This document shows, piece by piece, positions 17,843-55,275 of a stretch of DNA of 64,000 nt. Positions within the stretch are counted from its first letter, which is position 1, and each line of letters opens with the position of its first letter. A program made the translations under genes and the position numbers. Source of the stretch: Mobula birostris (Eukaryota); the NCBI RefSeq assembly GCF_030028105.1, contig NC_092396.1:15955820-16019819 (forward strand). Direction: 5' to 3'. The notes beneath the pieces are model-generated. The model was not told the DNA's origin, ran no database searches, and saw only the letters and a program-made list of their open reading frames with translations.

Positions 17843-18372
17843 TTTGTCCCGGTCGTTGCCCATAAACTCACCGCTGCCTCGTCACAGCCCCCTTTCAGCT
17901 CTTTGCCTGCACTCAGTGTGATGTTAATGCGGCTCATTGAGGCTTTCTCGCCCATTCATAACCTTACCGACCCTTTATGCCTCTAATCAAACTCGAGTGA
18001 CTTAAACAAGCTCCGGGAGAGTCCATCGAAATCGTGTATGGTCTCGACTTTCTTTCAAAGGCCTGTCGCGTGCCAAACCTCCTTTCACCCTGCTCCCAAA
18101 AGCTGCCTCCTCTTTACCCACTCGGGATTTTTCTCGCGGTATCGAATCGATTGGTCGCGAGATGCTTCCACGTTTGTTGTGCGCCCCGGGCTGGTGACTT
18201 GTTCTCTCTCTGTGGCCACGGAATTGGGGCCGTGGGAGCTCAATGGGATGGAGGCGTTTCTGCGATTTTCCTCGCTGCGAGGTGCCGTCCTGCCTGAAGG
18301 CTGCTGTCAGGGACTGGGTCACATTTAATATGGTAAACGGGGGCCCCGCCGATTCGCTCCAGCTCAGCAAAT
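17843..18372 (+). repeat. Conserved non-coding block A, copy 1 (candidate enhancer)
   Basis: About 95% identical by eye to copies at 24.3, 37.7 and (inverted) 54.5-55.3 kb. CpG-rich; HES class-C site CGCGTG 18067-18072, TCF site TTCAAAG 18054-18060, CCCATAAA, CCAAT. Confidence 0.95.
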
Positions 18373-18789
18373 CGCTTCTAAAAGAAAAGCGGAAAGAAAC
18401 ATTTCAGGAGATGTCGTTGTACCGTGTGTCTATGTATCTGGGTGTGTGTGAACGCATGTGATGAATCTTTCTAACTATCTCTGACATGATGTTCTCGTTT
18501 ATATTTTTTAGGATTACAGGACAGAAGGCCGCTTGGCCGATCGATCCTTTGATAGAAATTTGGTGGATCCTGTTCGATATGTTCCATTACCTGGCTCTTA
18601 CCGCACATTCCGGATCTTCTGCCCACGTTTAACTACTTACCTAATTCCCTTATGAATGCTACCAGCGAATCGTAAACCAACTAAGCTGCAGGCCACTCCG
18701 AACTCCGAGACTGCTCCACCATTTTAAAATGTAAAGTGAATTTATTATCAAAGTACGTATATCACCAAATAGAATGATGGAAAGCCCAG

Positions 18790-20870
18790 AATCAGGAACG
18801 GGTTTAATATCACTGACATATGTCGTGAAATGCATTGTTTTGCAGAAGCAGAACAATGCGATACAATAATAGAAACTATAAATTACAATAAATATGTAAT
18901 TAAAAGAACATGCATAATTAATGAATTTATATTAACGGCGTCTTCCCCGCTGCCATCAGATTTCTGAATGGGCAATGAACCCATGGACACTGTCATCGTC
19001 CATTCAGAAATGTGATGGCGGAGAGGAAGAGGCGGTACCTGAAACGTTGAGTGTGTGTCTTTAGGCTCCTGTTCCTGCTCCTTGATGGTAGCAATGAGAA
19101 GAGGGCATGATGGGGGTCCTTAATAATGGACGGCTTTTTTTTGAGGCATCGTCATTTGGAGGTGACCTGGATGCGGGAGAGCTGGAACCCATCATGGAGC
19201 TGGCTGAGTTTACAACTTTCTGCAGCCTTTTTCCGAGCCCGTCCAGTTGCCGTTCCATGCCAGACGATGGTGCAACCGGTTACAAAGCTCTCCATGGTGA
19301 TCTGTAAAGATTCGCGAGTGTCTTTGATAACATACCAATTCTCTTCAAACTCCTAATGAAATATAACCGCTGTGGTGACTTCTTTGTAACTGCATCAATA
19401 TGCTGGGCCCAGGTAGAGCCTTAGAAATGTTAGCACGCAAGAGCTTAAAACTGTCCGTCCTGATCCCTCGATGAGGACTGATTTCCCTTCCTGAACGTCC
19501 ACAATCAATTCCTTGGTTTTACTGACGTTAAGAGCCAGGCTATTGCTGTGACACCACTTACCTCGCCTCCTCGTCACCATCTGAAATTCCGCCAACAATA
19601 TTTGTGTCGTCGGCAAATTTATACATCGCGTTTGATCTATGGGCGTAGAGGGAGTGGAGCAGCATCTTTAAGGTGCGCCAGTGTTGGTTGGCAGAGAGGA
19701 GGCGATGGTATTTCCGATCCTCATAGATCTTTCCCAGTGAGGAAGTCAAGGATCCAGTTGCAGAGGGAGGTACAGAGGCCCTGATTTTGGAGCTTGTTGA
19801 TTGGAAATAAGGGTATGATTGTGTTGAACTCTGAGTTGTAGTCAATAAACAGTAGCCTGATGTAGATATTACTATTGTCCAGGTGTTCCAAGTCCGAGTG
19901 GAGAGCAACTGAGATTGCACCCGCTGTACACCTATTGCGGCGATTGGCAAATTGTAGTTGGTCCAGGTGCTGTCTTAGGCAGGAGTTTATTCCAGCAATG
20001 ACCAACCTTTCTAAGTACTTCATCATAGTAGATGTGAATGCCACTGGGCGATAGCTGTTGAGGCAGCTCTCCCTACTCTTCTTGGGCACTGGATAAGATT
20101 GTCGCCCTTTTGAAGCAGGTGGGAGCCTCTGAATTTGAAGATTTGAAGACGTCCTAGAACACACGCCCCAGTTGGTTGGCACAGGTTTTCAGAGCCTGGA
20201 CACCTGTTGCCTGGCGAGGAGTCGCCTTCCTGAAAGATGTTCTGACGTCGGCATCCGAGACAGAGATCACAGGATCACCAAGATGTTGCGGAGATTCTCT
20301 CTTTCAAAGCGAGTGTAAAGAGCGTCGAGCTCAACTGGGAGGGAAGCATCACAGCCAGTCATGATGTTGGGTTTCGCTTTGTAGGAAGTAATGGCCTGCA
20401 GACGATTCCGTCTCTAATCTCAATCGGAATCGGGTTTTTTTTTCGCTTTAAAATAGCCTTCCGTCGGTCGTACCTGGACTGCTTGTATAGTTATGGATTA
20501 CCTCTTGTGTAGTTCTGCCCGATGGTCGTAGTGAAAAGAGAGCGTGGCCTGGATGATGGGGTCCTTGATGATAGATGCTGCTTTCTTGTGCAACGCTCGA
20601 TATAAATGTGCGTAATGATGGGGATGGCTTTGCCTGTGACGGACTGGGTTGTATCCACTACGTTCTGCAGACCCACTGGTTCCTGGACATTGTTGTTTCC
20701 ACACCAAGCCGTGATGCAAACTGTTACGATACTATTCCAATCTGCATCTATAGAAATTTGTCAATGTTTTAGATGACGTGCCAAGTCTAACCAAACTTCA
20801 ATGAAAGTAGAGGCTCCGCCGTGCCTTCTTTGTGATGACGCTTACGTGCTGGTCCCAGGACAGATCCTCT
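18790..20870 (-). mobile_element. Rex1/Babar LINE fragments (at least two pieces)
   Basis: ORFs 19558-20182 with CLNSYRPVAFTS, DQLQFA, RLLFIDYNSEFNTIIP, CNWILDFL, KFADDT. Confidence 0.85.
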
Positions 20871-21604
20871 GATACCAATTTCTTTAACCAATTTCCCTCG
20901 GGACCAATAAAGTATGACTATGACTATGATATGGTAACGCCCAATGTTATATTAATATTAAAGATCATGGTGATCTTTGCTTCAAACGCTATTTTCCAGC
21001 TACGTATCCATGTCTCTTTAACAACCAGAGGGCTTGGATAATAGATATCAGAATCGGCCCAATTTCACTCACTGAGTGCAGAACTAGCCCCTCATTTCTG
21101 TCTTTAATGATCTACGTCTTATTTTGAGGCTTTAATCTAATATGACTCCCTTGCCCACATTCTGGGGTCAGAGTCAAAATACCAAGTGCCGTTTGGGACT
21201 GAACGTCTTCAATCAAGGGACGATGAATCCTTGGCCTTCTCTATCCCGGAAGGTTGCGGAGGTTCTGTCATTGGTTCCGTTCCAAACGGAGATCGATATT
21301 TTTCGGGATATTGGAGGAACTCGAGCAGTAACATTGTGACTGTATAAGTACAAATATATATTGTATTAACAATGGTTGGAGCATTTCCCTCAAGATGTAT
21401 GGATTCGTAACTGCTCCATCGTTTGGATCCATTATCATACAAAAATATTTCTTTCCACCCCCCCCCCCTCCCGCACTCCATCTGCCTCTCATATTTGCCT
21501 CTGTCATTCACCTGTCACTGTCTCCCACTGTCACCCCTCCACTATCTGGCTCAACCTACCCGTCACCTTTCACCCCTCTGCCAATTACTGTACTCCCATA
21601 AGGC

Positions 21605-21912
21605 GGTAAGACATAGGAGCAGAATTAAGCCACTCGGCCCATCTAGTCTACTCTGCCATTCCATCATGGCTGATTTATATCCCTCTCATACCCAGTCTCT
21701 TGCCTTCTCCCCAAAACCTTGACTAACCTAGGATCTATCAATCTCTGTTTTAAATATATCCAATGACTTGGCCTACTTAGCCGTTTGTGACAATGAATTC
21801 CAGATTCATCTCACTTTAGCTAAACAGATTCCTCCTTATCCCTGTTCTAAATGGATGTCCCTTTATTCTGAGTGTGCCCTCTGGTCCGAGACTCCCCCCC
21901 CCCCCCGCCCCA

Positions 21913-21945
<33 letters not shown>

Positions 21946-22115
21946 AAACATCCTCTCTGCATCCACTCTATCTTGGCTTTTCAATATTTGATAAGTTTCT
22001 ATGAGATACTCTCCTCATTCCTCTAAGCTCCGGCGAATACAGGGCCAGAGCCATCAAATGCTCCTCGTACGTTTATGCTTTCATTCTCGTGAAATTCCTC
22101 TGAACCCTCTTCTGT
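21605..22115 (-). mobile_element. CR1 LINE 3' end with (CA)n
   Basis: Reverse-complemented CR1 3'UTR and ORF2 end. Confidence 0.75.
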
Positions 22116-22834: not shown

Positions 22835-23089
22835 ACAGTGGAAAGTGGGAAGGTCGGAGAGCGCGGGAGGCCGCTGTGAGATTTCAGAGCAGAAAATTGT
22901 GATTGTGTCAGAACATGGAGACCATTAGCACGGTGCTGGCTTTGAAGGCAGAGCATGAAATGGATTTGGAGTTACTACAGAGCGAGAAATGAGCTTTGAA
23001 TAGCACGCCCACTATGACATTGGCCGCAAGTATCTTACCGCCTTATCACCCACACACACTGAGCAGCAGGAATTTTTCGGTTCAGTTTT
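22835..23089 (+). repeat. Conserved non-coding block B, copy 1
   Basis: ctgtgagatttcagagcagaaaattgtgattgtgtcagaacatggagacc...ctttgaatagcac...aatttttcgg, homologous to 29.95, 42.2 and inverted 50.6-50.9 kb. Confidence 0.9.
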
Positions 23090-24280: not shown

Positions 24281-24933
24281 CTTTTATCCCCGCCAGATGT
24301 TTGCACATCAGCCCACGACAATCGCAGGCAGCTCATGTGTAACAATGAAGGCCGGCCGCTTTTTTTTAACCAGCTCCACAAAGACAATGAAGTATTTGTC
24401 CCGGTCGCTGCCCATAAACTCGCCGCTGCCTCTTCACAGCCCCCTTTCAGCTCTCTGCCTGCACTCAGTGTGACGTTAATGCAGCTCATTGGGGCTTTCT
24501 CGCCCATTCATAACCCTACTGACCCTTTATGTCTCCAATCAAACTCGAGTGACTTAAACAGGCTCCGGGAGAGTCCATCGAAATCGTGTTTGGTCTCGAT
24601 TTTCTTTCAAAGGCTTGTCGCGTGCCAACTTCCTTTCAACCTGCTCCCAAAAGCTGCCTCCTCTTTACCCACTCGGGATTTCTCTCGCGGTATCGAATTG
24701 ATTGGTCGCGAGATGCTCCCACGTTTGTTGTGCGCCCCGGGATGGTGACTTGTTCTCTCCCTGTGGCCACGGAATTGGGGCCGTGGGAGCTCAATGGGAC
24801 GGAGGCGTTTCTGCGATTTTCCTCGCTGCGAGGTGCCGTCCTGGCTGAAGGCTGTTGTCAGGGACTGGGTCACATTTAATATGGTAAACGGGGGCCCCGC
24901 CGATTCGCTCCAGCTCAGCAAATTGTTCCTTTT
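24281..24933 (+). repeat. Conserved non-coding block A, copy 2
   Basis: Core 24395-24923 plus a 5' extension shared with copy 4; Sox-type ACAATG sites; retains the 11-bp segment 24598-24608. Confidence 0.95.
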
Positions 24934-26230: not shown

Positions 26231-26471
26231 GCAACTCACGGAGAATGGGGGGCGAGTGACCCAGGTGTCTGTTCATCCGCGGGTCAGTGTACTGTGTGTG
26301 AAGTGATGATAAATAGAGGGGCTTGCGGAGAAGTAAACCCGGAGCCTCGTTGGAAGCGCTGCCATTTAGTGGTGTGGGAAAGGCAGAAAGCGCTAATAAC
26401 CGTAACACGGAGAATCTAAACGCGACTTTCTTCCCCAGGAGACAGCTGGCGTCTCTCCATTCAGTTCATCG
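26231..26471 (+). repeat. Conserved non-coding block C, copy 1
   Basis: Highly similar to 41231-41473; conserved RBPJ consensus TGTGGGAA at 26373-26380. Confidence 0.9.
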
Positions 26472-27571: not shown

Positions 27572-27891
27572 TTTTCTCCCTCTGTCCCTCTGACTATACC
27601 CCTTGCCCATCCTCTGGGTCTTTCCCCCCCTCCCCCCTTTCCCTGGGCCTCCTGTCCCATGATCCTCTCATATCCCTTTTGCCAATCAATTGTCCAGCTC
27701 TTGGCTCCATCATTCCCCCTCCTGTTTTCTCCTATCATTTTGGATCTACCCCTCCCCCCCACTTTCAAATCTCTTGCTAGCTCTTCCTTCAGTTAGTCCT
27801 GACGAAGGGTCTCGGCCCGAAACGTCGACTGTACCTCTTCCTAGAGATGTTGCCTGGCCTGCTGTGTTCACCAGCAACTTTTATGTGTGTT
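27270..27891 (+). mobile_element. Penelope-like element 3' part (GIY-YIG C-terminus plus terminal repeat), 17-bp TSD
   Basis: ORF end PVATHFNSTSHSHSDMSIHGLLYC...LEEQHLIFRLGSLQPDGMNIDFSNF; GCAGGACCTACAGGTGG duplicated at 27253-27269 and 27892-27908. Confidence 0.92.
27795..27830 (+). ncRNA. Minimal (Penelope-type) hammerhead ribozyme motif, intact copy
   Basis: Stem I AGTC/GACT, core CTGACGA, stem II GGG-tctcgg-CCC, GAAA, palindromic loop-less stem III ACGT, predicted GUC cleavage site at 27824-27826. Confidence 0.75.
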
Positions 27892-29751: not shown

Positions 29752-29950
29752 CTAGAGAGCCGACGAATCATCATCTTCCCTTCTAAGTTCACTGCAAAGC
29801 GGCTTTAATAATACAATTGCAGACATTATTCAATTTTAAAATGTAGAAAGTAAATTCAAAGGGTTACCGCTCCAAACCGTCCCAAATGAAGACTGTAGGG
29901 TCTTGTCTTAACATTCTTTTTTTTTAGCTTGGGCGAGCTTTTAGCGGTAA

Positions 29951-30140
29951 GAAATGGGAGGGTCGAGGGAAGCTGTGAGATCTCTGAGCAGAAAATTGTG
30001 ATTGTGTCAGAACATGGAGACCACTAACACGGCGCTGGCTTTGAGAGCAGAGCGTGAAACGGATTTGCCATTTACCACAGAGCAAGAAATGAACGTTGAA
30101 TAGCACCCCCACTAAGATATTGGCCGCCAAAGCCCTGTCA

Positions 30141-30187
<47 letters not shown>

Positions 30188-30240
30188 CAATTTTTCGGTT
30201 CATTTTCCCCTGTGGGATGTACATCGCCGACCAAAATGCC
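29951..30240 (+). repeat. Conserved non-coding block B, copy 2 (with expanded (CA)n)
   Basis: Homologous to B1, B3 and B4; CA tract expanded at about 30143-30183. Confidence 0.9.
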
Positions 30241-30639
30241 CCACCTCACTTTTTTCCCATATATAGTATTTCTGTTTTTTTGCATGATTTTTAATCTATT
30301 CAATATACATATACTGTATAAAGTATACTGAACAAGATATACTTTATTATTATTATTTCTTCTATATTATGTATTGCATTAAACTACTGCTACTAAGTTA
30401 ACAAATTTCACGTCACATTCTGTGATAATAAATCTGATTCTGAGATGACGCTCCTGGCCATGAGCGAGTACATAATCGAATTTGTTCAAAATTACGCATA
30501 AGTATTTAAATAATGTAGGCTCCATAAGTGTCTGGAAAACTATACAGTGGTCACAAACTCAAACGAAATCCTTCAAAATTCTGAAGCCACCATCTGTAAT
30601 CAGGGAAATGAGAAATCAAAAAGAAATGACAGCCCCTGA

Positions 30640-30743
30640 CAGTCAGCACATTCCCGCCCTGTAACCCACACACCGCGTAGAGTCAATTTTTTTTTTGCTT
30701 CATGTTCCCATCAGTGAGGGACACCGCCGCCCAAGATGCGGGT
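30640..30743 (+). repeat. Partial, diverged extra copy of the 3' half of block B
   Basis: cgccctgtaacccacacac...gagggacaccgccgcccaagatgcgg matches the B3/B4 tail gaggga(c)(a/g)ccgccgccca(a/g)g(a/c)tgcgg. Confidence 0.7.
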
Positions 30744-34921: not shown

Positions 34922-37652
34922 TTAAGTAATCTGAAAGCAGACGAGCCAGTATTTGTGAAGAGGGAGAGCTGTCATGATATTTTCAGATTTCCAGGAACGC
35001 AGTACAGTATTTCACTCTTCTATCTTTACTGCTGAACGCGATTGAACAGGTCAGAGTGGCTATGCAATATGTAGCCACAGTGATATGTGTTGGTTATGTT
35101 AGTGGGCCAGCAATTCAGAAAGTGAGTCCGCAGGCTATCAAGGCAGTCTGAGGATTTGTACGCACGTTGTTAAAGGAGCTTAAAAATAAATAAAGAGCAG
35201 GTGTCTGTAAAAGTGACCACAACGCTGTAGGATTACTGAAAACCCAGACGAAAGGTTTGGTAGTGGTAATACTAAAGGACTATTCATCTAGAGATCATGA
35301 GTTCAAATCCTCATTTCAATTCACATTCACTCTGGTCAAGGGAGAATCTAATTACTCTTGGTTAATGGCAACTAATTCACTCTTGAAAGCGTCGGTTTAA
35401 TTTAGAAGATGTTATTAGCCGGGAGATAAATAACCTGTGATTCTCAATTGGAGTCCAGGGTCTCGTCAAGCGAGCATGGGCTTGTCAGTTTCACTGTAAG
35501 ACCTTGTCAATTATAATGACATCCTTCTGATCCGAGGTCGAGTCCCGTTTGTCTGCTAAATGACTAACCAGACTCTCTTTTAAAAAATGAGTTGAAGAGG
35601 TCGGGTTGGATGGGAGAGGTGGGAGTGGGGGCGATTCTAACAAATAACAGTGTATGAAGAAACTGCCAGATTATCTTGTCCCCGTTTCATTCCCGAGGCT
35701 ATTCATTCGGAATTTGTGGTGACTTTTGAATTATTATTATTATGTCAATTTGGAAATCAGACATAAAAAATAGAAGTCTTTATCCGACTTGATTTTTGCG
35801 TACAAATGCCTCGTTACCCGATTTCATGCTCCCAACAACTTTAAATTGTGAGCGCAAAATCTTTCAATCTAATTGTATTACAGTTTGAACGCATTAATTT
35901 ATTCGGATTATATTTGTGGGGCCGATAATTTATACTTTAGCCGACATCATTATCTGATTGTAAAATTTATTTTCTTGGAGCGGAACGTGCATGAATTTAT
36001 TTCCGTCCGTTGGCTTGGGACATTTTGATGTGTTGCAGTGCTTTCATAACCACCGCTTTCTTCCAAATTCCTAAAAAAAAGCTATAATATTCCATGCTGT
36101 CCCACAAGCGTGGATATTTAGCCGCCCTTGTTTCCGATAAATCTTGAAATTTCTCACTTGATATTTTGCTGCTCTTTGAAGCAAAATATCCTTTCCCTTC
36201 CTCCACTAACTCCTTGTCTCCGAAACTTCAACCACACTTCCCACAGACACACACAGTGCGCACACACACACACGCCTGAAGGCTGACAAAAAAAGTTATC
36301 CATGTATAGAAATCAAAACCGAGTTAAACTTATGCATCCCGTCTGTGATGAGATAGTTTGAAGAGGGGGAAAAATCAGATTCGTAGAGATTTATGGTCCA
36401 TTTGACCGATTGTGTTCAAGACAACCAAAAATGGATCTGGGATTAATCCCACCCCGACCTACACTCTTCAAATACATTCTGGAGGAGGGTCGCCAGCCAC
36501 GTGTTTGAGAAGCTGATGGTTTGCACAGCATGCAAGAATTTATTTGCAATTCATTACTACTTTGATGATACAGTACTATTGACTCTAGTAGTTCAAAGAC
36601 TGGTACTCTAATGAAATACCGAATTGCCACAATAATGACAACCGAGAAGGCTGTCTGTACCGATGTAAGCAGAGGTCCCACACTCCAGTGGGCGAGTCTT
36701 TGGAGTCTATCAGGTTGCAGGACCCTGTCAGCATTAGTATTCCAGTGAACCAAAAGCCAATAATTCGGGGAGGTTTCCTTTTCAGTTACCATCCGTAAAG
36801 AACATCCGGAATAAATCAACAAATCCCTGTTAAAAAATATTCAGCAAAGGCATGTGACACTCGGCGTGGCTGTGAATCATCACGAAACTGTAGATAAACC
36901 AAAGCAATATCCTAATACCAAATAACAGTTAAAATGAGATCTAGAAGTACGTTTGTGAAAACAATAAACGGTGCGCTAGGATAACCGTGCACCGAGTTAC
37001 TCCCTAGATCCAATCCACGGCGATATTTAATGCATCCCGGAATCCCTTTCCGTCTGGTCTCTTCAATAACATCACAATATTCCATTATATTCTCTCACAT
37101 TTCCTTATCTGGTTTCCCATGTACTGTTGTGCTGGGCAACTGTTCCACAATGCAGCGTATCTCACGGACACACTCCGAGCTTCTGCAGGTCTCTTTCGGA
37201 CCTATGGCCAACAATTATTTTCATTAACCAAAGGATTCTAAAAAAGATAATCTAATTAAACTTTTTTTGGTGGGGGGAGTAATATCTTAAAGACACGTGA
37301 ATAACCTGGGGAATAATATTTAATATTCCTGATTCTTAGTTCACTGTCCCTCGCATATCACCCAATCAAACATCCATGATCTATACAAATCACTATCTAG
37401 TTACACTTCACCTTTCTTCCCTCCAGATGAAACATGCCCCTCCCAACTGGTCCAGTCTTTACCCCCTGTTTAGCTCTCCAGCCTCCGCCTCTTCCCCCGA
37501 TTTATAATGGGAAGATAATATTGTGTCAATTTGCCTGATTATAATTTGTATTCAGACGTGAGAATTGGGATCAGCCGTTCCCCCCACTTCTGTCAGTCTG
37601 ACAGCCTTGCCGGGATCCTCGCCCAGAATTTTGCTGCCATTTTATTTAAATT

Positions 37653-38381
37653 CCCGCCAGCTCATGTTTAAGAATGAACGCCGGCCGCTTTTTTTTACCA
37701 GCTCCATAAAGACAATGAAGTATTTGTCCCGGTCGCTGCCCATAAACTCACTGCTGCCTCGTCACAGCCCCCTTTCAGCTCTTTGCCTGCCCTCAGTGTG
37801 ATGTTAATGCGGCTCACTGGGGCTTTCTCGCCCATTCATAACCCTACCGACCTTTATGTCTCCAATCAAACTCGAGTGATTTAAACAAGCTCTGGGAGAG
37901 TCCATTGAAATCGTGTTTGGTCTCAAAGGCTTGTCGCGTGCCAACCCCTCTCTCACCCTGCTCCCAAAAGCTGCCTCCTCTTTACCCACTCGGGATTTTT
38001 CTTGCGGTATCGAATCGATTGGTCGCGAGATGCTCCCACGTTTGTTGTGCACCCCGGGATGGTGACTTGTTCTCTCTCTGTGGCCACGGAATTGGGGCCG
38101 TGGGAGCTCAATGGGACGGAGGCGTTTCTGCGATTTTCCTCGCTGCGAGGTGCCGTCCTGGCTGAAGGCTGTTGTCAGGGACTTGGTCACATTTAATATG
38201 GTAAACGGGGGCCCCGTCGATTCGCTCCGGCTCAGCAAATTGTTCCTTTTATTTCGCAGTAATGAAAACAGTTTCTTTGAACTCGTTAGAACGTGACACT
38301 CAGTCCGTGTCCGAATCCTAGAGAGAGAGAGACTGAGCCACCGGCTGAAGCCTCCGAATTACGACTCAGGTCAGAGGCAGA
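37653..38381 (+). repeat. Conserved non-coding block A, copy 3
   Basis: Same core as A1/A2; lacks the 11-bp segment (junction 37924/37925); shares a 3' extension of about 140 bp with copy 4. Confidence 0.95.
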
Positions 38382-41230: not shown

Positions 41231-41473
41231 GCAACTCATACGGTGGGGGGGGGGGGGAATTGGGCAAGTTCTGTTCATCTGCGGGTCAGTGTACTGTGTG
41301 TGAAGTGATGATAAATGGAGACGCTTGCGTAAAAGTAAACCCGAAGCCTCGCTGGGAGCGCTGCCATTTAGTGGTGTGGGAAAGGCAGAAAGCGCTAATA
41401 ACCGTAACACGGAGAATCTAAACGGGACCTTCTTCCCCCGCAGACAGCTGACGTTTCTCCTTTCGGTTCATCG
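41231..41473 (+). repeat. Conserved non-coding block C, copy 2
   Basis: Homologous to 26231-26471; TGTGGGAA at 41375-41382. Confidence 0.9.
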
Positions 41474-42213: not shown

Positions 42214-42494
42214 ACAGTGGAAACGGGAGGGTCGCGGGGAGCTGGGGTCAGTTGTGAGATCTCAGAGCAGAATTGAGATTGTGTCCGAACATTGCGACAG
42301 TTAACGCGGCGCTGGCTTTGAGAACGGAGCGTGAAACGGATTTGCCATTTACTACAGAGCGAGAAATGAGCTTTGAATAGTACTCCCACTACGCCAGCAT
42401 CCTATCGCCCTGTCACCCACACACACTGAGCAACAGCAATTTTTCGCTTAATTTTCCGCTGTGGGAGGGACGCCGCCGCCCAAGCTGCGGATCT
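42214..42494 (+). repeat. Conserved non-coding block B, copy 3
   Basis: Homologous to B1/B2/B4; tail cagcaatttttcgcttaattttccgctgtgggaggga identical to inverted B4. Confidence 0.9.
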
Positions 42495-42544
42495 AGAGGA
42501 CGCACTCAGTTTTTGACCTAAACTGTCCAAAGTTACAGTTAAGT

Positions 42545-45900: not shown

Positions 45901-46695
45901 CTGACAAACTAAGCGCATCAGCAGCTGTCTGAGAATTGCACGCTCGCTCTGCGTTGTGCAACGGAGGGTGCCGAAATCGGACATTCATGCGAATCACAAT
46001 GGGATCTATCATTTTCATGAGGCAAAAAGAAACTATGCTTATACTTGCCAAATGTTATAACTTGGCAGAACCAGCGGCAGAAGGTCTAGTTAGCCCTGCT
46101 GCTCCCAGAATGTGAGGGAGGGCAGCCGAAGAAGAATCAGTCACACTTCCCATCTCTGACTGCTACACAGTGACTCCGGCTGCGAATCGGCCTCCTTGCG
46201 ATGCAGTTCATAATCGACCGCTGAGGCCAAAAAAAAATCTGTGAAAAACGTTCATTAACAGTAACGAATTGATTTATTTAAATCGACTGCTATTTTACAC
46301 AAGTACATTGAAATTGTGTTGGGAAATTCGATATGGCCCAATTATTCTGCGAGGCTGTTTGTGCTTCTGATTAACAACATCCCGCGACTTCATCTCATTT
46401 GTTTCATTCCACTTCCTTCCTGCCGCATTGGTATTTGTACCTAATCACAAACAAGAGAAAATCTGCAGATGCTGGAAATCCAAGTAACACACACGATTTG
46501 TCCTGCTGAAGGGTCTCGGCCCGAAACGTCGACTGTACTCTTTTTCATAGGTGCTGCCTGGCCTGCTGAGTTCCTCCAGCATTTTGTGTGCGGTGCACGT
46601 ACCTACTCGACTTTCCAACTTAACCAAGGCATTCCTTAAAACACTTTTAACTGTTAGTATCATATTCACTCTAATCTACCCCGTCGATCTATATA

Positions 46696-46852
46696 NNNNN
46701 NNNNNNNNNNNNNNNNNNNNNNNNNNNNNNNNNNNNNNNNNNNNNNNNNNNNNNNNNNNNNNNNNNNNNNNNNNNNNNNNNNNNNNNNNNNNNNNNNNNN
46801 NNNNNNNNNNNNNNNNNNNNNNNNNNNNNNNNNNNNNNNNNNNNNNNNNNNN
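46696..46852. other. Assembly gap (157 N)
   Basis: Run of N. Confidence 1.
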
Positions 46853-47504: not shown

Positions 47505-48001
47505 CTACCAAGGCCGCCAAAGGGTTTCTGAGTCAGGACAAAGTACAAGGTTGGTGGTAGTTTTAGTATCAATGCTGATGGCTGGACTTCTCTTTTCCTT
47601 TGCTGGGGTTTCGGGGCTGGATTTCTGTTCACTCGACGTGACTTCAGCCACTCGTCTCTGGCTGCTGCGTCGAGCCAAGGAAGGGGAGGGAGGAGGAGGT
47701 TTGCCCGAGCGGCCGGTTGGGACGGTGGGCTCGCTGGGTGGCGGAATCGACGGGCTTAATGAAGCCTGCACTGAGTGAAGCCGGGTTGACGGAGAAACTT
47801 CAAACCGACAGCCGCTGTCCGCCGTGCTGAAACCAGAAGCCGAAAAGACGGGAAAAGCGTTTACCAAGTGGTTCAGCACTTCCAGTCGCAGGTGTTCGTC
47901 TGTACTTTTGCTTCGCAGCAGGTACTGACTGACCCCGTTCAAGCAGCTTCTGAATCCTGCCTGGTATTCCGCCACACCATCCTGCGACAACACCAGGGCC
48001 C
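47505..48001 (-). CDS. HES3: HES3/her3 exon 4 (Orange domain, P/S-rich region, WRPW, stop)
   Basis: Acceptor ttttcag; phase-compatible with exon 3. (G)ALVLSQDGVAEYQAGFRSCLNGVSQYLL...SETLWRPW*. Joined CDS 72+96+82+497=747 nt, 248 aa. Confidence 0.92.
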
Positions 48002-48699
48002 CTGAAAACACAAATACAATCAGCGAGGTCAACTGGATGAGGATCGCCAGTAATTTTCTAACTATAGCGTTTCATACTTTACCGATGCTTTATACGTTTA
48101 TTTTCCAATTTATTTTTCCACTGTTTCTTTTAAATATCAACTTACACGTTCCCTCCGTCCGCACTGTTTGCTATTGCGATAACGCATAGTCCAATACAGA
48201 GGGAGGTCAGGCACTCAAGTGTGTTAACCTTCCTTTTTCTGAACGCCTCAGCCACATCACCACCAACCCCCAGTCCAAATCCCGCTTCTTCTGCTTCGGA
48301 CACTCAAGCCATCTACTTAACCTCCTTCTTCTACTACGTCACCCACATCTCGACCCTTCCATCTCCACCTCTTCGCATTCCATGCGCCCAACACCATCCC
48401 CGTTCGCGTATCTCCGTTAATTTCAATGCAGCGGAGCGGCGCATTTTGGTGGCCTTGTAAAGGGTTGACGGCTTTGGGGGAAGACAAAGGTCAACTAATT
48501 GGTCAAAGATTATTTTAAATTAAATTACACTATAGTAAATAAAATTTATCCTGCAGGGAATTCGGCGTTGAAAATTAGTAATCATCGCATTTACATTTGG
48601 AGATACCCAGGGTTTTTGCATCAACCTTCCGATGACGTTGGCAGAGCTCTGAATCCCACCTTCCTCCTTCCCTTCTTTTCCTTTCCCTCTCCCTCCCCT

Positions 48700-48784
48700 C
48701 CTACACACACACACTCTCTCTCTCTCTCATACACACAGGCAGACAACACACACACACAGAAACAGACAGACAGACAGACAGACA

Positions 48785-48836
<52 letters not shown>
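48700..48836. repeat. Compound microsatellite (CA)n/(CT)n/(GACA)n in HES3 intron 3
   Basis: Directly visible; a second (CT)n(CA)n tract lies at about 49210-49310. Confidence 0.95.
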
Positions 48837-48839
<3 letters not shown>

Positions 48840-49260
48840 TTACTCATTCTCTCTCAGCCCATCCAAGGAAAGAGGGTGCTATTTTGCTGTTATTGAAGGG
48901 AGTCAATTACCAGGGACACGAAATGGAATTGAGACACAGATCTCATCGAATGATGGTGCCCTGACTCAAATTTAACTGTACATCTTACCGCGCAACAACA
49001 ACACATGAAGTTTGCGATAAAGTTCCATCAGTTTGGGATGAAAGAGAAATATCACTGGAAATTATGATTCTTTCGCATGGAGGCCGGGAAGGGTCTGGAG
49101 CTCACTTGGTGGAAGGAGCTGGAATAAGGCCGGGCAGCATTTTTTTTCGGCCAGTTCAGTGGAGCCGATATGTGTCGATTCCACTAGACGTTACATCCAC
49201 ACCTACCACCGCTCTCTCTCTCACACACACATACTCTCTCTTTCTTTCTATCTCTCTCTT

Positions 49261-49309
<49 letters not shown>

Positions 49310-49341
49310 AACCACCACCCACTGAGGGTGATAAGGCCTAC

Positions 49342-49423
49342 CTTGTCGAGAACTCTGCAAATCCCTCAGATGTTTGACTGTTAATTCCAGGATGTCGGCC
49401 TTTTCCAGTTTGCGCTTCCTGAT
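49342..49423 (-). CDS. HES3: HES3/her3 exon 3 (loop and helix 2)
   Basis: IRKRKLEKADILELTVKHLRDLQSSRQ(G); cag acceptor, GTAGG donor. IRKRKLEKADILEL is characteristic of the HES3 subfamily. Confidence 0.93.
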
Positions 49424-49728
49424 CTGTTCGGGATATAATAGTGGGTACAACATTTAAACAAAGCACACCGGAGGTGGGAGTGATAAATACCGAGAAATAA
49501 AGCATCCGAGCAAAAGTACAACACTCCAAGAGTTACAGACAGAAGGCAAGAGACTGGGGCTGAGAGAAAAATGGATCAGCCATAATGAAATGGCAGAACA
49601 GACGCGATGGGCCACAAATGGCCCAGTTCTGCTTCAAAATATTTTGGTTTAAGTTTACAAAGCACTTGGGCAAATGCCCATCCCCGCGGGACGGCCGTGA
49701 GAAAGATGTTCACAGTTTAAAATCTCAC

Positions 49729-49824
49729 ATTGTTGGAGTAGTGTTCTTCCAATAACGTCTTCAGCTGCTCCAGACATTCGTTGATCCGGGCTCTTCTTTT
49801 TTTCTCCATCAAAGGCTTCGAAAT
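49729..49824 (-). CDS. HES3: HES3/her3 exon 2 (basic region and helix 1)
   Basis: ISKPLMEKKRRARINECLEQLKTLLEEHYSNN; tttccag acceptor, GTGAGA donor; 96 nt. Confidence 0.93.
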
Positions 49825-49928
49825 CTGGAAACAATAAAAACGTTTACATGCTTTGCAATTTTCACAAATTAATACTTCGAAAGGAGACACCGCGGAAGTC
49901 GAACAATTCCGTTAAATTTCGTTCCCAC

Positions 49929-50000
49929 CTTTCGATAGCTGCACGCTTGTGCGGTGAGCGAGAGCTGGAACCGTCCCACCGGCTTGTTTGTATTTTTCAT
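49929..50000 (-). CDS. HES3: HES3/her3 exon 1
   Basis: ATG at 50000, MKNTNKPVGRFQLSLTAQACSYRK, AAG|GTGGGA donor in phase 0 with exon 2; about 120 nt downstream of a TATA box. Confidence 0.8.
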
Positions 50001-50500
50001 TTCAGTTTTTCGTTTTCCTGACGTACTTATTTTGGTTTTTGGAAACCTCGCGTGTTCTTGCTCCCTGAGAGCAGGTGAGCGGTGCGATTGTCCGGTATGT
50101 CGCTGGCAAGCCGCTTCAGGGTTTTATAAAGCTACGCCACTTTGCATCTGAATACAACGTGTTACCGCCTGTAGAAGCGGCCACTTGCCGCTGCTGTAAA
50201 CCCCTATTGTAAAGGGGAAGAGAATGCGCCTTTTATCATTATTCATCCCCACCGAATTAGAAACACTGAGCTGATCTTCCAGTGGTCAGTTGGTCAAATC
50301 TTTGCCTGATATTCCTTTAGAGTTGATGGGAATATTCTCCATTGATCAATGCCCATCAAAATAAGAAAAACAATAACCGATTATTAATTAGAACCCACTT
50401 ATCTATAAGACGAAATACGAAGAGGAATTTCTGTCTGGGAAGGTAGATACTGAGAGAAGTGCGGGTTTTTATTAAGAATTAATTAATTCTAATTCCTGTA
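50001..50500 (-). promoter_or_regulatory. HES3 proximal promoter / 5'UTR
   Basis: TATAAAA 50122-50128 (minus); octamer-like ATGCAAAG 50140-50147; Sox-type CTATTGT 50204-50210; palindromes CATTGATCAATG 50340-50351 and AGAATTAATTAATTCT 50475-50490. Confidence 0.7.
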
Positions 50501-50579
50501 AGGTTACCGAAAAGCCAACTGGTGATACTTTGCGATGCCCCTTATGTTTACCCCAAATGAAATGGGTTATCAGAGGCCA

Positions 50580-50870
50580 AGATCCGCATCCTGGGCGGCG
50601 GTGTCCCTCCCACAGCGGAAAATTAAGCGAAAAATTGCTGCTGCTTACTGTGTGTAGATGACAGAGCAATAAGGGGCTGGCGGCCAGTGTCATAGTAGGG
50701 GTGCTATTCAACGCTCATTTCTCGCTCTGTGGTAATTGGCAAATCCGTTTCACGCTCTGCTCTCAAAGCCAGCACCGTGTTAATGGTCTCCATGTTCTGA
50801 CACAATCACAATTTTCTGCTCAGAGATCTCACAGCGGTTCCCAGCTCCCCACGGCCTTTCCCTATCCACA
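50580..50870 (-). repeat. Conserved non-coding block B, copy 4 (inverted; about 450 bp upstream of the HES3 TATA box)
   Basis: Reverse complement of B1-B3. Confidence 0.9.
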
Positions 50871-52049
50871 GCACAGCCAGCAATAGTCGACAGTACCTAC
50901 AGAACTCTGCTAAGCATCCTCTAGCCTTTTGTGAGAACTTTATTCTTAGTGACGTATGGAAGTTGGCTGGTTGCAGTTTAAAATATCATTCTATTTAATT
51001 GATTGTATCAGCGTGGCCCGGACTTGCATCAGTTAGGAGCATTTAGAAGTCTTTTAAGGCTTACACATAAATGGGACTGACAGCCGAATATCCCGTGTGC
51101 AAACACGTGTTAAAGAAGATAATCTTCCATTTATTGTTCAAATACGCAAAACGCTACCCACTGGGAGCTAAAGTTTATCTGCACATTCACGCATTAACAC
51201 GTTGCCCGCAGAACCCACGGCGCGGACAAGTGTTATTTTCTAAAGGCAAATTTACTGCGCGGGGACTTGCAGAAACTTCACTCGGCGAGAATCTTCCGGC
51301 TTTCCTGAAGAGTTTTGAAATTTAGCATTCCGCTGTTCTACATTGTTTAAGATGTTGTGGAAAGGGAGAGCTCGACCATTTCACCATAAACTACCGAAGC
51401 TCCGAAATACCAGGAGATAACCAAACTACCAATTCACGCTGCTCCGCCGTTCTGTAGGAGTGATCAAACGAATCTTTGTCATCAGCTGATTACATCAGCA
51501 TCTAAAAATCAGCTCTGTGTAACGCCTGCTGTCGCCAGAGCCCAGTCTAGTTCCTTGGCCCCCTCAGTTACACAATTTGCCCTTCGCATATCATACCCGC
51601 ATTGCCAGTGGAGCAGTTCTCCAATGAAGAGCTTTGCGCTTTGCTCCGCTCTCCTTCCCTATGGTACTTTAATTTTGCTCTTTTCAAATAAATGTCAAAT
51701 TGTTATTGAATCTACTAATGCTGATCCCGCAGTCAATGTATTCCAGTACATTTGCTCTTCTTAATTACTCAGACAAAATAATTTAGTTTAATGTAAAGTT
51801 TCTGGAGAATTTTGGAGAATCAAGTGCTACTAGGAAGTGAGATGTTGTTATATGTTGTAAGGCCATCAGCCCTCAGAGAGGCATAGGACCGACGTTTTAG
51901 GTCGTGCTTCGAGACATCCCGGAATCTTACGCTCATCCTTGCGTAATGACAAGATAAAGGATCCAAACTGGAGGGAACTCCGGGTGCGTCTTTTCTTGAC
52001 GACGGTTGAAGACAGTGTGCTTGGGTATGTGTTGCACCCAATAACTGAT

Positions 52050-52500
52050 GGACATAGAACAGGCCTTGGCCCAGGATGCTGTGCCACCTTTAACTTACTG
52101 TAAGATTAATCGAACCGCTCTCCACCCCCTCCCCAACATGTACAGTACATAGCTCTCCATTTCCCTTCACCCATGTGCCTATGAGACTCGTCCCTAATGT
52201 CCACGCTCTCGCCACTTTCTCTCTAAAAATCCTACTCTTAACAATCAACTTAGCCATTTCTGTCTGTTCACTCTATCTATGCCTCTTTTGATCTTACACC
52301 CCGCTATCAAATCACACCTCGTCCCCCTTCGCTCCGAAGGGAAAAGCCCTAGCTCGCTCAGAACATGCTCTCTAATTCAGGCAGCATCCTGGTAAATCCC
52401 CTCTGCAGCCTCTCTAAAGCTTCCACGCTCTTCCCATAATGAAGTGACCAGAAATTATATTCCGAGTGTGGCCTAAACAGAGCTTTACAGAGCTGCAAAT
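52050..52500 (-). mobile_element. CR1 LINE 3' fragment
   Basis: ORF 52358-52588 with RPHSEYNFWSLHYGKSVEALERLQRGFTRMLP. Confidence 0.75.
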
Positions 52501-54502
52501 GGCCAAATATTAAACTGATTTTAAAGGAGGAAAGTGCTTTGAAAGATTTACGAAGAGTATGGAGATAACGAAGAATGTACGAAAACATACAAACTTGCAG
52601 ATCGTTGCGGGGAGTCGCATCGAACCATTCAGAACACTAGTTTACCCGCTGCCGGAATATTACTTCGAATACTGGTCGCCTGACTTCGGGTTAGGTTTCC
52701 CAGAATAGTTTCAGGAATTAGGAATTTCAACTATGATGTTCAACAGGGGAAGCTGCGATCGAGCTCCGCCTGTGTGTGTTTGGTGTGCGGAGGGAGATGG
52801 TGGGGGTGGGGGTTGGGACGATTTGATCACGATCAACTTAGGTAGAATACAAGATTCTATTTTCCTGTGTCGGGAGGGGAATTTCAAATGTTAGTGACGG
52901 GGAAAATACCCGGAGAATAATTGTGATCTGGAATTCAGCTGGGTTACAAAAAATCAGAGATTTGACTATCTATCTGTATTCTTACTGTAATCCACAATTT
53001 CCACTATTATGTATTACATTGTCCTGCTGTCGCAAAGTTAACACATTTCACGACATTTGCCGGTGATAGTAAACCTGATGTGATCCGGAATCTGATTCTG
53101 ACCGGTTCTTAACGGATCACAGGGTTGTGGGAGCAGTGAGCAGTGGGGTTGCAGGGGCTTGTTCTACAAGTAGACAGAGCAGACCGCAACAGTGTTTCAC
53201 TGTGATCAATTCTACGATGGTATAATTCCATGAAACACCCGGAAATATTGTTTAGGTCGACGGTATCTTGTCCAGAAAGCGGAGGTGGGGGGGCGGGGCC
53301 GGTGAATTACTTAATGTAGTTCTTCATCATTACAAATGCGCTCGAAAAGAAGGCATAAGGAAATGCTTCAGTCTGCGGCGGAAACTCTTAATGAGGTTCA
53401 TAGATCTAAGGAAGTTACGAATAAAACATAAGGAGAAGCCTTCCTGCTCAGGGAATGTTGCCAAGAGTGTCGCTATCGTATGGAGAAGCGGGCCTGATAA
53501 TGTCAACACATTCGGGGGTCGAAGGGGAAATTGAAGCAGCTCGACAGGATGAAAGGAAGGGGGTTGGTGATGGGTCACGCTGGTTCCATCCTATACAATG
53601 GGCCGAAAAAATGGAAGCGAGGGCAGGAAATGTCAGATTGTGAAATGGAGGTAGTTGAGCTGAGGACACGAACTGAAGTTGCGGGGAAGTCAGCGGACTC
53701 TCCAAAAGAGTGAAGAGTCAACATTAGAGGAAAGGGATACAGCGTGGAACAGGCTTGATACAGGCCGGATGCAGACTGGGAACGAGCTGTCCACGTAATA
53801 AACTGGATGCCATTTTGGAGCGAAGGAAACTGAGAGGCGACTTGACAGAGGTGTATAGAGTTATAAGAGGCTTAGAAAGAGCGCAAAGCCAGCGCCTTTT
53901 CCCCTATTACCAAATGGCATCCTTTTTACGGGGAGTGGAGGAAAGCTTAGGGGGAATGTTGGCGGTGTTTTTTTACGCAGAGAGTGGTAAATCCCTGTAA
54001 GTGCATGGCCGGGAGCGGTAGTAGAGGCTGATACTACAGGAACATTTCGGAGACTCTTAGGCACATGAATGAAAGAAAATGGATATTTATGGGCTGTTTG
54101 GGAGGGAAGGGTTAACTTTATCGCTCGGTACGTCATCGTGCGCAAAAGAGAAGGTACTGTTCTTGCTAGTGGAATCGTTGCGAATAAATATTTTGGGGAA
54201 GTCCAGTTTTTGGAATTCTCTTCCCCAAGAACTGTGGGCACTGCACCGTGGAATATATTCATGACCGAGACAGAGGCAAGAATGTTGAACAGAGGCCGAG
54301 AAAGAATCAGAATCATGTTTATTATCACTGATGTCGTCGTGACATTTGTTGACTTGTGACAGCAGTACAGTGAACGGCATAAATAAATTGTACAAAAGAG
54401 AAAACCGAGGCCTCGATCCCGGCGAGTAAGAGAGCAGATCCTGCGGCCGGAGGCCTTCCGCTTGTTCCTCTTTCAAATTCCGGATAGTAACAATAAATAA
54501 CG

Positions 54503-55275
54503 TCTGCCTCTATCCTGAGACGTCATTCGGGGGCTCCAACCCGTGGCGCGGTCTCTCTCCGAGGTTCTGACACAGACTGAGCGTCACTTTCACGTTCTAA
54601 CGAGTTCAAAGAAACTGTTTTCATTCCTGCGAAATAAAGGGAACAATTTGCTCAGCCGGAGCGAATCGGTGGGGCCCCCGTTTACCATATTAAATGTGAC
54701 CCAGTCCCTGACAACAGCCTTCAGCCAGGACGGCACCTCGCAGCGAGGAAAATCGCAGAAACGCCTTCGTCCCTTTGAGCTTCCACTGCCCCAATTCCGT
54801 GGCCACAGGGAGAGAACAAGTCACCATCCCGGGGCGCACAACAAACGTGGGAGCATCTCGCGACCAATCGATTCGATACCGCAAGAGAAATCCCGAGTGG
54901 GTAAAGAGGAGGCAGCTTTTGGGAACAGGTTGAAAGGAGGTTTGGCACGCGACAGGCCTTTGAGACCAAACACGATTTCGATGGACTCTCCCGGAGCTTG
55001 TTTAAGTCACTCGAGTTTGATTGGAGACATAAAGGGTCGGTAGGGTTATGAATGGGCGAGAAAGCCCCAATGAGCCGCATTAACATCACACTGAGTGCAG
55101 GCAAAGAGCTGAAAGGGGGCTGTGAGGAGGCAGCGGTGAGTTTATGGGCAGCGACCGGGACAAAAACTTCATTGTCTTTGCGGATCTGTTACAAAAGCGG
55201 CCGGCGTTCATTCTGAAACATGAACCGCCTGAGATTGTTGTGGGTTGATGTGCAAACATCTGGCGGTGATAAAAG
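54503..55275 (-). repeat. Conserved non-coding block A, copy 4 (inverted; about 4.4 kb upstream of the HES3 TATA box)
   Basis: Reverse complement of A1-A3; carries both the 5' extension (shared with A2) and the 3' extension (shared with A3). Confidence 0.95.

What the first reader, a model, noticed from the sequence alone, without database searches (positions are those of the whole stretch)
17843..55275. Four-copy A-(C)-B non-coding cassette around HES3: candidate amplified enhancer array
Seen: block A at 17843, 24281, 37653 (+) and 54503-55275 (-); block B at 22835, 29951, 42214 (+) and 50580-50870 (-); block C at 26231 and 41231. In all four units B follows A in the same orientation, 3.6-5 kb away, and C (when present) lies between them. 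The spacers are unrelated and contain different CR1, Rex1 and Penelope insertions, so the duplications look old, yet A copies are about 95% identical by eye. Only the inverted unit 4 leads into a gene: B4 is about 450 bp upstream of the HES3 TATA box. Units 1-3 have no recognisable downstream gene. Established: the motifs inside (HES class-C CACGCG, Sox ACAATG, TCF CTTTGAA, Cdx/Hox CCCATAAA, RBPJ TGTGGGAA, CCAAT) are typical of hes/her enhancers. Inference: the HES3 upstream regulatory region was multiplied, or former hes gene duplicates lost their coding parts while the cis-elements were kept, giving an enhancer array built by segmental duplication.
Basis: partly seen in the sequence, partly recalled or inferred. 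Interest (0 to 1): 0.85.

Follow-up and report, generated by a model that had tools for sequence, protein, structure and literature searches.

The report
Duplicated non-coding blocks flanking HES3
Around the neural-development gene HES3 of a ray, a short stretch of non-coding DNA has been copied four times and one 545-base part has stayed unusually alike; it may be a set of duplicated gene switches, but nothing here shows that it switches anything.

Summary
Block A has four copies with a 532-545 bp core that is 93.6-96.2% identical. Block B has four copies plus one fragment. Block C has two copies. All lie in the same A-(C)-B order and orientation, 3.6-5.0 kb apart, with unalignable spacers. 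Unit 4 is inverted and ends 452 bp before the TATA box of a four-exon HES-3-like gene.

The main refutation test fails. In contigs of three species, A and B have the summed depth of a handful of copies (about 2-7x single-copy), whereas neighbouring transposon pieces reach 10^3-10^5. A is not coding: dN/dS is 0.93, there is no codon periodicity, and indels are 1, 11 and 1 bp. It matches no Rfam family and folds no better than shuffles. No second set of hes exons exists in the window.

So this is a local segmental duplication of non-coding HES3 flank. The enhancer reading is untested. The motifs are single hits. A's high identity (shoulders 84-85%, B 2-3x more diverged) fits selection or past gene conversion. 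The tool for cross-species loci was closed. The scan noted similar conserved patches at other loci of this genome. Interest is moderate.

The parts
17831..18379 (+). Block A, copy 1. It carries the core only and is truncated on both sides.
   Evidence: 17 private substitutions
24281..24933 (+). Block A, copy 2 (core plus 5' shoulder)
37649..38381 (+). Block A, copy 3 (core plus both shoulders)
54503..55275 (-). Block A, copy 4 (core 54646-55176 plus both shoulders), 4.5-5.3 kb upstream of the HES3 start codon
22835..23089 (+). Block B, copy 1
29943..30240 (+). Block B, copy 2, interrupted by a CA microsatellite
30636..30739 (+). Partial extra copy of the 3' 100 bp of block B
   Evidence: E 4.9e-10
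42214..42494 (+). Block B, copy 3
50580..50869 (-). Block B, copy 4, ending 452 bp upstream of the HES3 TATA box
26247..26471 (+). Block C, copy in unit 2
41250..41473 (+). Block C, copy in unit 3
50122..50128 (-). TATAAAA of the HES3 promoter
   Evidence: read
49926..50000 (-). HES3 exon 1, coding part (starts MKNTNKPVGRF)
49723..49827 (-). HES3 exon 2 (basic region and helix 1)
   Evidence: (HLH, 9.2e-08)
49340..49435 (-). HES3 exon 3 (helix 2)
47505..48002 (-). HES3 last exon (Orange domain to WRPW and the stop codon)
   Evidence: (Hairy_orange, 4.3e-06)
46696..46852 (.). Assembly gap between unit 3 and the 3' end of HES3. It lies in no block and was not filled or looked up.

Best explanation
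Shown: a non-coding piece of the HES3 5' flank was copied locally by segmental duplication. The piece runs from block A through C to block B and stops about 450 bp short of the core promoter. There are now four units: three in direct orientation on the 3' side of the gene, and one inverted unit that is the gene's own upstream region.

Inferred: all four units remain, and the 545-bp CpG-rich A core has changed two to three times less than B and about three times less than its own shoulders. The reason I favour is that A, and more weakly B and C, is cis-regulatory DNA bound by factors, either an orphan-CpG-island or poised-enhancer-type module or a promoter-like module. The four units would then act as redundant, additive inputs to HES3. 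The rest of each unit is later insertion or decayed sequence.
For: - Collinear A-(C)-B order and orientation in 4 of 4 units.
- A and B are low-copy. In X1 the summed contig depth is 133-308 over A4 and 88-118 over B4, against 43-60 in single-copy bins. Eight of the 30 bins, which are transposon pieces, reach 3,600-510,000. The ratios are similar in X5 (32-49 vs 13-15) and X13 (20-33 vs 3-7).
- Paralogue-specific variants appear as separate contigs at single-copy depth. The two 11-bp-insert forms of A1 and A2 have depths 59.9 and 50.4. An A3-type contig has depth 51.5, with exactly the 10 substitutions and 1 gap that separate A3 from A4.
- One insert form is also present in X13, so the copies predate that species split.
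- A is not coding. Variable sites by codon phase are 10/9/9, indels are 1, 11 and 1 bp, and dN/dS of the one frame open in all copies is 0.93. Pfam finds nothing.
- A is not a known or strongly folded RNA.
- Identity steps from 95% in the core to 84-85% in the shoulders, also in pairs that do not involve the truncated A1.
- B core distances are 1.9-3.2 times the A distances. Pair 2-4 is closest and pair 1-3 farthest in both blocks.
- No long shared tracts point to recent gene conversion (p 0.11-1.0), and 45 of 53 variable sites are private to one copy.
- All four A copies, C2, C3 and B3 are among the 15 CpG-island-like segments of the window.
- Enhancer duplication is a documented route to redundant enhancers (PMC13345019, abstract read). 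Orphan CpG islands are reported at poised enhancers of developmental genes (10.1101/2020.08.05.237768, search listing and start of abstract only).
Against: - There is no functional evidence of any kind: no RNA holder, no chromatin data, no methylation data.
- The motif content is single hits.
- Cross-species constraint could not be measured. The A contigs of the other species are collapsed consensus paths of several paralogues. X1 record 7 differs from A4 at exactly A4's five private sites. Their low divergence from A4 therefore says nothing about selection.
- In cold-blooded vertebrates, computed CpG islands often lie away from promoters (PMC3583005, start of abstract). A's CpG sites vary only about 1.9 times as often as other sites (12 of 53 variable sites on 13% of columns). 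With a window background o/e of 0.59, that does not prove hypomethylation.
- GC 54% against 44% is also what GC-biased gene conversion would give.
- The A-B distance correlation depends on the columns chosen (r 0.14-0.78).
- The tool warns that contig depth is not a copy number. At one place (54961) the depth of 342 would allow 2-3 more A-like copies outside the window.
- The adjacency of units 1-3 to HES3 rests on a scaffold join across the gap.
Confidence: 0.45

Rival explanations
1. The units are a neutral low-copy repeat. The same local segmental duplication occurred, but the A core is alike only because it was homogenised among the copies by gene conversion some time ago, possibly GC-biased. 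It has since drifted and does nothing for HES3.
For: - Sharp steps from 95% to 84-85% identity at the edges of A.
- A star-like pattern, with 45 of 53 variable sites private. The six 2:2 sites are spread over all three possible groupings (3, 2, 1).
- A is GC- and CpG-richer than its surroundings.
- dN/dS-like neutrality and an even spread of changes along A.
Against: - No significant shared tracts in any of the 6 pairs (p 0.11-1.0).
- All four copies, including the inverted one 17-37 kb away, would have to be homogenised at about the same time with the same 5' boundary. That boundary also appears in pairs without the truncated A1.
- A distances keep the same closest and farthest pairs as B, which a reset by conversion would tend to erase.
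- The paralogue-specific 11-bp insert form is shared with another species, so homogenisation is at least not ongoing.
Confidence: 0.3
2. A is the CpG-island promoter or first exon, and B or C further parts, of a tandemly duplicated non-coding RNA gene next to HES3. The blocks are then kept as transcript or promoter parts, not as enhancers.
For: - A is CpG-island-like in all copies.
- The fixed A-(C)-B order and orientation with variable spacing looks like exons and introns.
- A pyrimidine tract followed by CAG, an acceptor-like site, lies at the start of the A3 and A4 3' shoulders (read).
Against: - No run on record as RNA holds the stretch.
- No Rfam family matches.
- There is no excess folding (z +2.29 and +0.07).
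- Block edges are ragged between copies and carry no shared splice consensus.
Confidence: 0.12
3. A and B are the two ends of a low-copy composite mobile element that hopped locally.
For: The same two end blocks appear with variable insides. All copies lie within 40 kb.
Against: - Depth is that of a handful of copies in three species.
- No inverted repeat joins the outer ends of A and B.
- The outer boundaries differ between copies.
- There is no transposase-, integrase- or RT-type ORF in sense between A and B. The RT fragment in unit 1 is on the opposite strand.
Confidence: 0.05
4. The array is an assembly artefact, either wrongly multiplied copies or a false join.
For: - An assembly gap separates units 1-3 from HES3 and unit 4.
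- A4's four clustered private letters at 54767-54787 are not seen in any contig laid there.
Against: - The copies differ by 4-6% and by indels, and their separate forms occur in read-derived contigs at single-copy depth.
- Two other species show the same excess depth.
Confidence: 0.03

Closest known systems
Redundant ('shadow') enhancers born by duplication of an existing enhancer
   Same: Several copies of one non-coding module lie around one developmental transcription-factor gene. They arose by local duplication and flanking sequence similarity has been lost. PMC13345019 (abstract read) reports duplication signatures in 18.3% of fly and 33.9% of mouse shadow-enhancer sets, more often in larger sets.
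   Different: No enhancer activity, accessibility or target has been shown here. There are four copies at 94-96% identity, with a two-module (A, B) unit kept in order.
Orphan CpG islands at poised enhancers of developmental genes
   Same: A is a 545-bp segment with GC 54% and CpG o/e 0.80-0.89, with no gene of its own, lying a few kb to tens of kb from a developmental regulator. The concept comes from 10.1101/2020.08.05.237768 (listing and start of abstract only).
   Different: The methylation state is unknown. In cold-blooded vertebrates, computed CpG islands are poor guides (PMC3583005, start of abstract). The known cases are mammalian and are not arrays of duplicated copies.
Duplicated conserved non-coding elements (dCNEs) of vertebrates
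   Same: Paralogous non-coding elements stay recognisable while everything around them is unalignable (PMC2781166 and PMC1896008, search listing only).
   Different: dCNEs sit beside paralogous genes from whole-genome duplications and are conserved across vertebrates. Here all copies flank one gene, and conservation beyond close relatives is untested.
Low-copy repeats homogenised by gene conversion
   Same: There is a sharp step in identity inside a duplicated segment, and the patch is GC-rich. The same kind of patch was read this way at another locus of this genome (note s1-145615, unchecked).
   Different: No significant conversion tracts were found, and a paralogue-specific indel is shared with another species.
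Tandem hes/her gene clusters (for example zebrafish her4.1-4.5, recalled from PMC10112928, search listing only)
   Same: Local duplication at a hairy/E(spl)-type locus.
   Different: In those clusters the coding genes are duplicated. Here only one set of hes exons exists in the 64 kb window.

Membership tests
Dispersed transposable-element family | Many copies spread over the genome | tested here: not met
   summed contig depth over A4 is 133-308 and over B4 is 88-118, against 43-60 in single-copy bins of X1. The eight transposon bins reach 3,600-510,000. The low-coverage run X9 has depth 0 in the three A-core bins but up to 4,236 in transposon bins. Caveat: contig depth is only a rough proxy.
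Dispersed transposable-element family | Defined termini (TIR, LTR, TSD) or own coding capacity | tested here: not met
   No inverted repeat joins the outer ends of A and B. Boundaries are ragged. No Pfam domain occurs in A or in the sense-strand spacer ORFs tested.
Local segmental (tandem or inverted) duplication | Parts kept in the same order and orientation in every unit | tested here: met
   A then (C) then B in 4 of 4 units, with C in 2 of 4.
Local segmental (tandem or inverted) duplication | Parts of a unit share one history | tested here: inconclusive
   Pair 2-4 is closest and pair 1-3 farthest in both A and B, with r 0.71 on 146 B columns. However, r ranges from 0.14 to 0.78 depending on the columns, and the six pairs are not independent.
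Local segmental (tandem or inverted) duplication | Distinct copies present in reads, not made by the assembler | tested here: met
   A1-, A2- and A3-type contigs each appear at depth 50-60 in X1. One insert form also appears in X13.
Transcriptional enhancer or cis-regulatory module | Open or marked chromatin, or reporter activity | not testable with these tools
   No such data are at hand.
Transcriptional enhancer or cis-regulatory module | Slower change than neutral DNA between species | tested here: inconclusive
   Contigs of the other species over A are collapsed consensus paths of several paralogues.
Transcriptional enhancer or cis-regulatory module | Clusters of factor-binding motifs beyond chance | tested here: not met
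   Each named motif occurs 0-2 times per block. Only the short ACAAT and CCAAT occur more often, at about background density.
CpG island (sequence definition: at least 200 bp, GC at least 50%, o/e at least 0.6; the criteria are recalled) | Composition | tested here: met
   The A cores have GC 0.54-0.55 and o/e 0.80-0.89 over 533-545 bp. They are among 15 such segments in the window.
CpG island (functional: non-methylated island) | Lack of methylation in germ line or embryo | not testable with these tools
   There is only an indirect hint: CpG sites vary about 1.9 times as often as other sites.
Protein-coding exon | Frame kept, third-position excess, dN/dS below 1 | tested here: not met
   Indels of 1, 11 and 1 bp, codon phases 10/9/9, and dN/dS 0.93. 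No Pfam family.
Known or structured non-coding RNA | Rfam match, or folding better than shuffles | tested here: not met
   0 Rfam matches at gathering score in the window. z is +2.29 and +0.07.
Gene-conversion tract | Runs of shared variants longer than chance between some pair | tested here: not met
   Permutation test on 53 variable sites over 6 pairs gives p 0.11-1.0. The test has low power and cannot see old events.
HES3 orthologue (the flanked gene) | bHLH, Orange and WRPW domains; best hits named HES-3 | tested here: met
   HLH and Hairy_orange domains and a WRPW end. 9 of 13 hits are named HES-3 or HES-3-like, the best at 90% to Hypanus sabinus. The four exons were mapped with P0001.

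The most novel reading that the evidence does not exclude
The four A-B units are a lineage-specific amplification of a HES3 control module in manta and devil rays. In this reading they are four hypomethylated CpG-island enhancers placed on both sides of the gene, kept by selection, that raise or stabilise HES3 expression in neural progenitors. That would be a candidate genetic contributor to the very large brains of these rays. The link to brain size and the role of HES3 in neural stem cells come from recalled general knowledge and from the abstract of PMC13174599, not from any test here.
Probability: 0.07. Interest if true: 0.75.

Novelty: new member of a known kind. Interest (0 to 1): 0.4.

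Why it matters
If the A and B copies are active, this is a clean natural case of regulatory DNA multiplied without its gene: one developmental repressor with four nearly identical upstream modules. Such a locus would allow tests of whether duplicated enhancers add dosage or robustness, and of how they stay alike. If they are inert, the locus is only a further example of low-copy repeats with a homogenised GC-rich patch, a pattern this scan has already met elsewhere in the same genome. Its meaning hinges on data that are not yet available.

Tried and rejected
- Coding reading of A. One antisense frame is open in all four copies over about 100 codons. I rejected it because dN/dS is 0.93, there is no codon periodicity, the indels break the frame, and Pfam finds no family.
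- Second hes gene or pseudogene behind B1-B3. tblastn with the window's own exon translations and with the Hypanus HES-3-like protein found only the one gene. Weak hits at 60254-60416 (E 0.29) are in two frames with no DNA similarity.
- Alternative first exon. The N-terminus of the bHLH-less Heptranchias isoform P0004 matches nothing in the window.
- RNA reading. Rfam gives 0 matches, and A4 folds no better than shuffles on either strand.
- TE reading. See the depth profile and the absence of terminal inverted repeats.
- Cross-species constraint. I abandoned this because the A contigs are collapsed consensus paths of several paralogues.
- CpG decay as a proxy for methylation. It is too weak in a genome with a background o/e of 0.59.
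- Literature. 0 papers hold both 'Mobula' and 'hes3'. Searches on hes3/her3 enhancers and a term search inside PMC12127900 gave no described HES3 upstream element to compare with. Supplementary files were not opened.
- Earlier notes. Look-ups near the place and by sequence returned nothing.

Full report
**What is there**

- Block A lies at 17831-18379, 24281-24933 and 37649-38381 on the plus strand, and at 55275-54503 on the minus strand.
- Block B lies at 22835-23089, 29943-30240, 42214-42494 (+) and 50869-50580 (-). A partial fifth copy of its last 100 bp lies at 30636-30739.
- Block C lies at 26247-26471 and 41250-41473.
- The profiles find no other copy in the 64 kb window.

In each of the four units A is followed by B in the same orientation, 3.63-5.01 kb later. 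C lies between them in units 2 and 3. The spacers share only short pieces, most of which belong to very high-copy repeats.

**The gene**

The minus strand holds a four-exon gene:

- Exon 1, coding part: 50000-49926.
- Exon 2: 49827-49723.
- Exon 3: 49435-49340.
- Exon 4: 48002-47505.

It has an HLH domain, a Hairy_orange domain and a WRPW end. I searched it with the last exon alone. Of 13 hits, 9 are named HES-3 or HES-3-like by their sources, the best at 90% identity from the stingray Hypanus sabinus.

No other hes exon is detectable in the window. A weak hit at 60254-60416 is noise: it is in two frames and has no DNA similarity.

The species label 'giant manta ray' comes from earlier notes of this scan and was not checked. 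The best protein hit fits a stingray-like batoid.

**The gap**

The N run at 46696-46852 lies between unit 3 and the 3' end of HES3. It is 653 bp behind the stop codon, in non-coding DNA and in none of the blocks, so reading frame is not at stake. Its left flank ends about 90 bp after a copy of a common 100-bp repeat, and its right flank is AT-rich unique DNA.

I did not test continuity. Reads were laid on unit 4. The linkage and relative orientation of units 1-3 to HES3 therefore rest on the scaffold.

**Is it a transposon family?**

I laid Logan contigs of four runs on 49400-55350 at 80% likeness. The runs were X1 (same species label), X5, X9 and X13 (three other coded organisms).

| Run | Single-copy bins | A4 bins | B4 bins | Transposon bins |
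|---|---|---|---|---|
| X1 | 43-60 | 133, 198, 308 | 118, 88 | 3,600-510,000 (8 of 30 bins) |
| X5 | 13-15 | 32-49 | 61, 29 | not summarised |
| X13 | about 3-7 | 20-33 | 24.5, 10.7 | not summarised |
| X9 (low coverage) | not summarised | 0 in the three A-core bins | 3.3 | up to 4,236 |

The high-depth X1 bins include a piece inside HES3 intron 2.

The tool warns that contig depth is not a copy number, so I read this only as 'a handful of copies, not hundreds'. One position (54961, depth 342) would allow two or three A-like copies beyond the four in the window.

Individual contigs fit the four window copies.

- The 11-bp insert forms of A1 and A2 appear as separate contigs at depths 59.9 and 50.4.
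- A 160-bp contig at depth 51.5 differs from A4 by 10 letters and 1 gap, exactly the A3-A4 difference.
- A 259-bp contig at depth 116 differs from A4 at five letters, exactly the number of A4-private sites in those columns. It is therefore a collapsed consensus path.
- One insert form is also present in X13, so distinct paralogues predate that species split.

There is no inverted repeat joining the outer ends of A and B. The block boundaries differ between copies. The only reverse-transcriptase ORF inside a unit lies on the opposite strand. The TE reading and the assembly-artefact reading are both unlikely.

**Is it coding or an RNA?**

- One antisense frame of A is open in all four copies over about 100 codons. 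However, 7 synonymous against 20 non-synonymous changes give dN/dS 0.93.
- The 28 variable sites of the 300-bp gap-free block fall 10/9/9 on the three codon phases. The copies differ by indels of 1, 11 and 1 bp.
- Pfam finds nothing in the A ORFs or in the spacer ORFs I tested, apart from RT and endonuclease fragments.
- Rfam has no match in the window at gathering score.
- The A4 core folds no better than dinucleotide shuffles on either strand (z +2.29 and +0.07).

**What is special about A**

- The core has 532 gap-free columns and is 93.6-96.2% identical in all six pairs.
- Its shoulders, present in only some copies, are 84-85% identical. The step at the 5' edge is also seen in pairs that do not involve the truncated A1.
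- The best-aligned 146 columns of B are 1.9-3.2 times more diverged than A for the same pairs. Pair 2-4 is closest and pair 1-3 farthest in both blocks. The correlation (r 0.71) falls to 0.14-0.43 with other column choices, so it is suggestive only.
- Of 53 variable sites in A, 45 are private to one copy. The six 2:2 sites are split 3, 2 and 1 over the three possible groupings.
- A permutation test for long shared runs, which would signal recent gene conversion, is not significant in any pair (p 0.11-1.0).
- A has GC 54% and CpG o/e 0.80-0.89, against 44% and 0.59 for the window.
- All four A copies, both C copies and B3 are among the 15 CpG-island-like segments of the window.

**Reading**

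The structural part is well supported: a local segmental duplication of non-coding HES3 flank that stops short of the core promoter. Why A stayed so alike is open.

I favour constraint on a regulatory module, at 0.45. The reasons are:

- the shared boundary of the core in pairs with and without A1;
- the preserved ranking of pairs between A and B;
- the lack of conversion tracts;
- the retention of a paralogue-specific indel across species.

An old round of homogenisation by gene conversion, perhaps GC-biased, explains the sharp steps, the star-like pattern and the GC richness without any function. I give it 0.3. A tandemly duplicated non-coding RNA gene (0.12), a composite mobile element (0.05) and an artefact (0.03) follow.

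It carries no weight. The CpG-island argument is weakened by the report that computed islands are poor guides in cold-blooded vertebrates (PMC3583005, start of abstract only).

**Comparison with what is known**

- Duplication of enhancers is a documented source of redundant enhancers (PMC13345019, abstract read: 18.3% of fly and 33.9% of mouse shadow-enhancer sets).
- Orphan CpG islands at poised enhancers of developmental genes are described (10.1101/2020.08.05.237768, listing and start of abstract).
- Duplicated conserved non-coding elements are known from whole-genome duplicates (PMC2781166, listing only).

Even in the best case this is a new member of a known kind. No paper in the library holds both 'Mobula' and 'hes3'.

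**What could not be done**

The HES3 loci of other rays and sharks therefore could not be compared, and that comparison is the decisive test between selection and conversion. A pattern scan of metagenome contigs with an invariant 32-mer of A found nothing, which was expected and is uninformative. No listed holder of the stretch is on record as RNA, so expression is unknown.

**Verdict**

The blocks are real, low-copy and non-coding, and their function is untested. Interest is 0.4.

Noticed in passing
window 54767-54787: A4 carries four private substitutions within 21 bp, all T on the plus strand. In one search the only contigs laid there, in X1, X5 and X13, read the letters of the other copies. 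The likely cause is that Logan's contigs collapse the paralogues into one consensus path, but an error in the assembly's consensus is not excluded.
   Followed up: partly
window 30636-30739: There is a fifth, partial copy of the last 100 bp of block B, 400 bp behind B2. B2 itself is interrupted by a CA microsatellite at about 30139-30190.
   Followed up: partly
window 3201-4000: This is the most CpG-dense segment of the window (GC up to 0.61, o/e 1.0-1.3, 55 CpG in 800 bp). Several ORFs overlap on both strands with no obvious gene. It lies next to an RT fragment at 1767-2728.
   Followed up: no
window 52186-52583 and 49400-49658: These are extremely high-copy repeats, with summed contig depth of 2-5 x 10^5 in X1 against about 50 for single-copy DNA. 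The second lies inside HES3 intron 2 and has relatives at 1375-1537, 21598-22058 and 42543-42981.
   Followed up: partly
window 8131-8243, 11318-11417, 14754-14847, 27781-27893, 46497-46606, 60538-60630: A repeat of about 95-113 bp occurs in six copies at 82-97% identity in both orientations. It looks like a SINE or a LINE tail. One copy lies about 90 bp before the assembly gap.
   Followed up: no
window 8093-11087 (-): LINE remnant with endonuclease (Exo_endo_phos_2) and reverse-transcriptase ORFs. Further RT fragments lie at 1767-2252 (+) and 19721-20182 (-).
   Followed up: partly
protein P0004 (Heptranchias perlo): This is a predicted HES-3 isoform without the bHLH domain, in which another 5' exon is joined to the last exon. 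Its N-terminus matches nothing in this window. It recalls the two first-exon forms of mouse Hes3, which I recall and did not check.
   Followed up: partly
window 48600-49310: Long CA/GA microsatellites fill much of HES3 intron 3.
   Followed up: no
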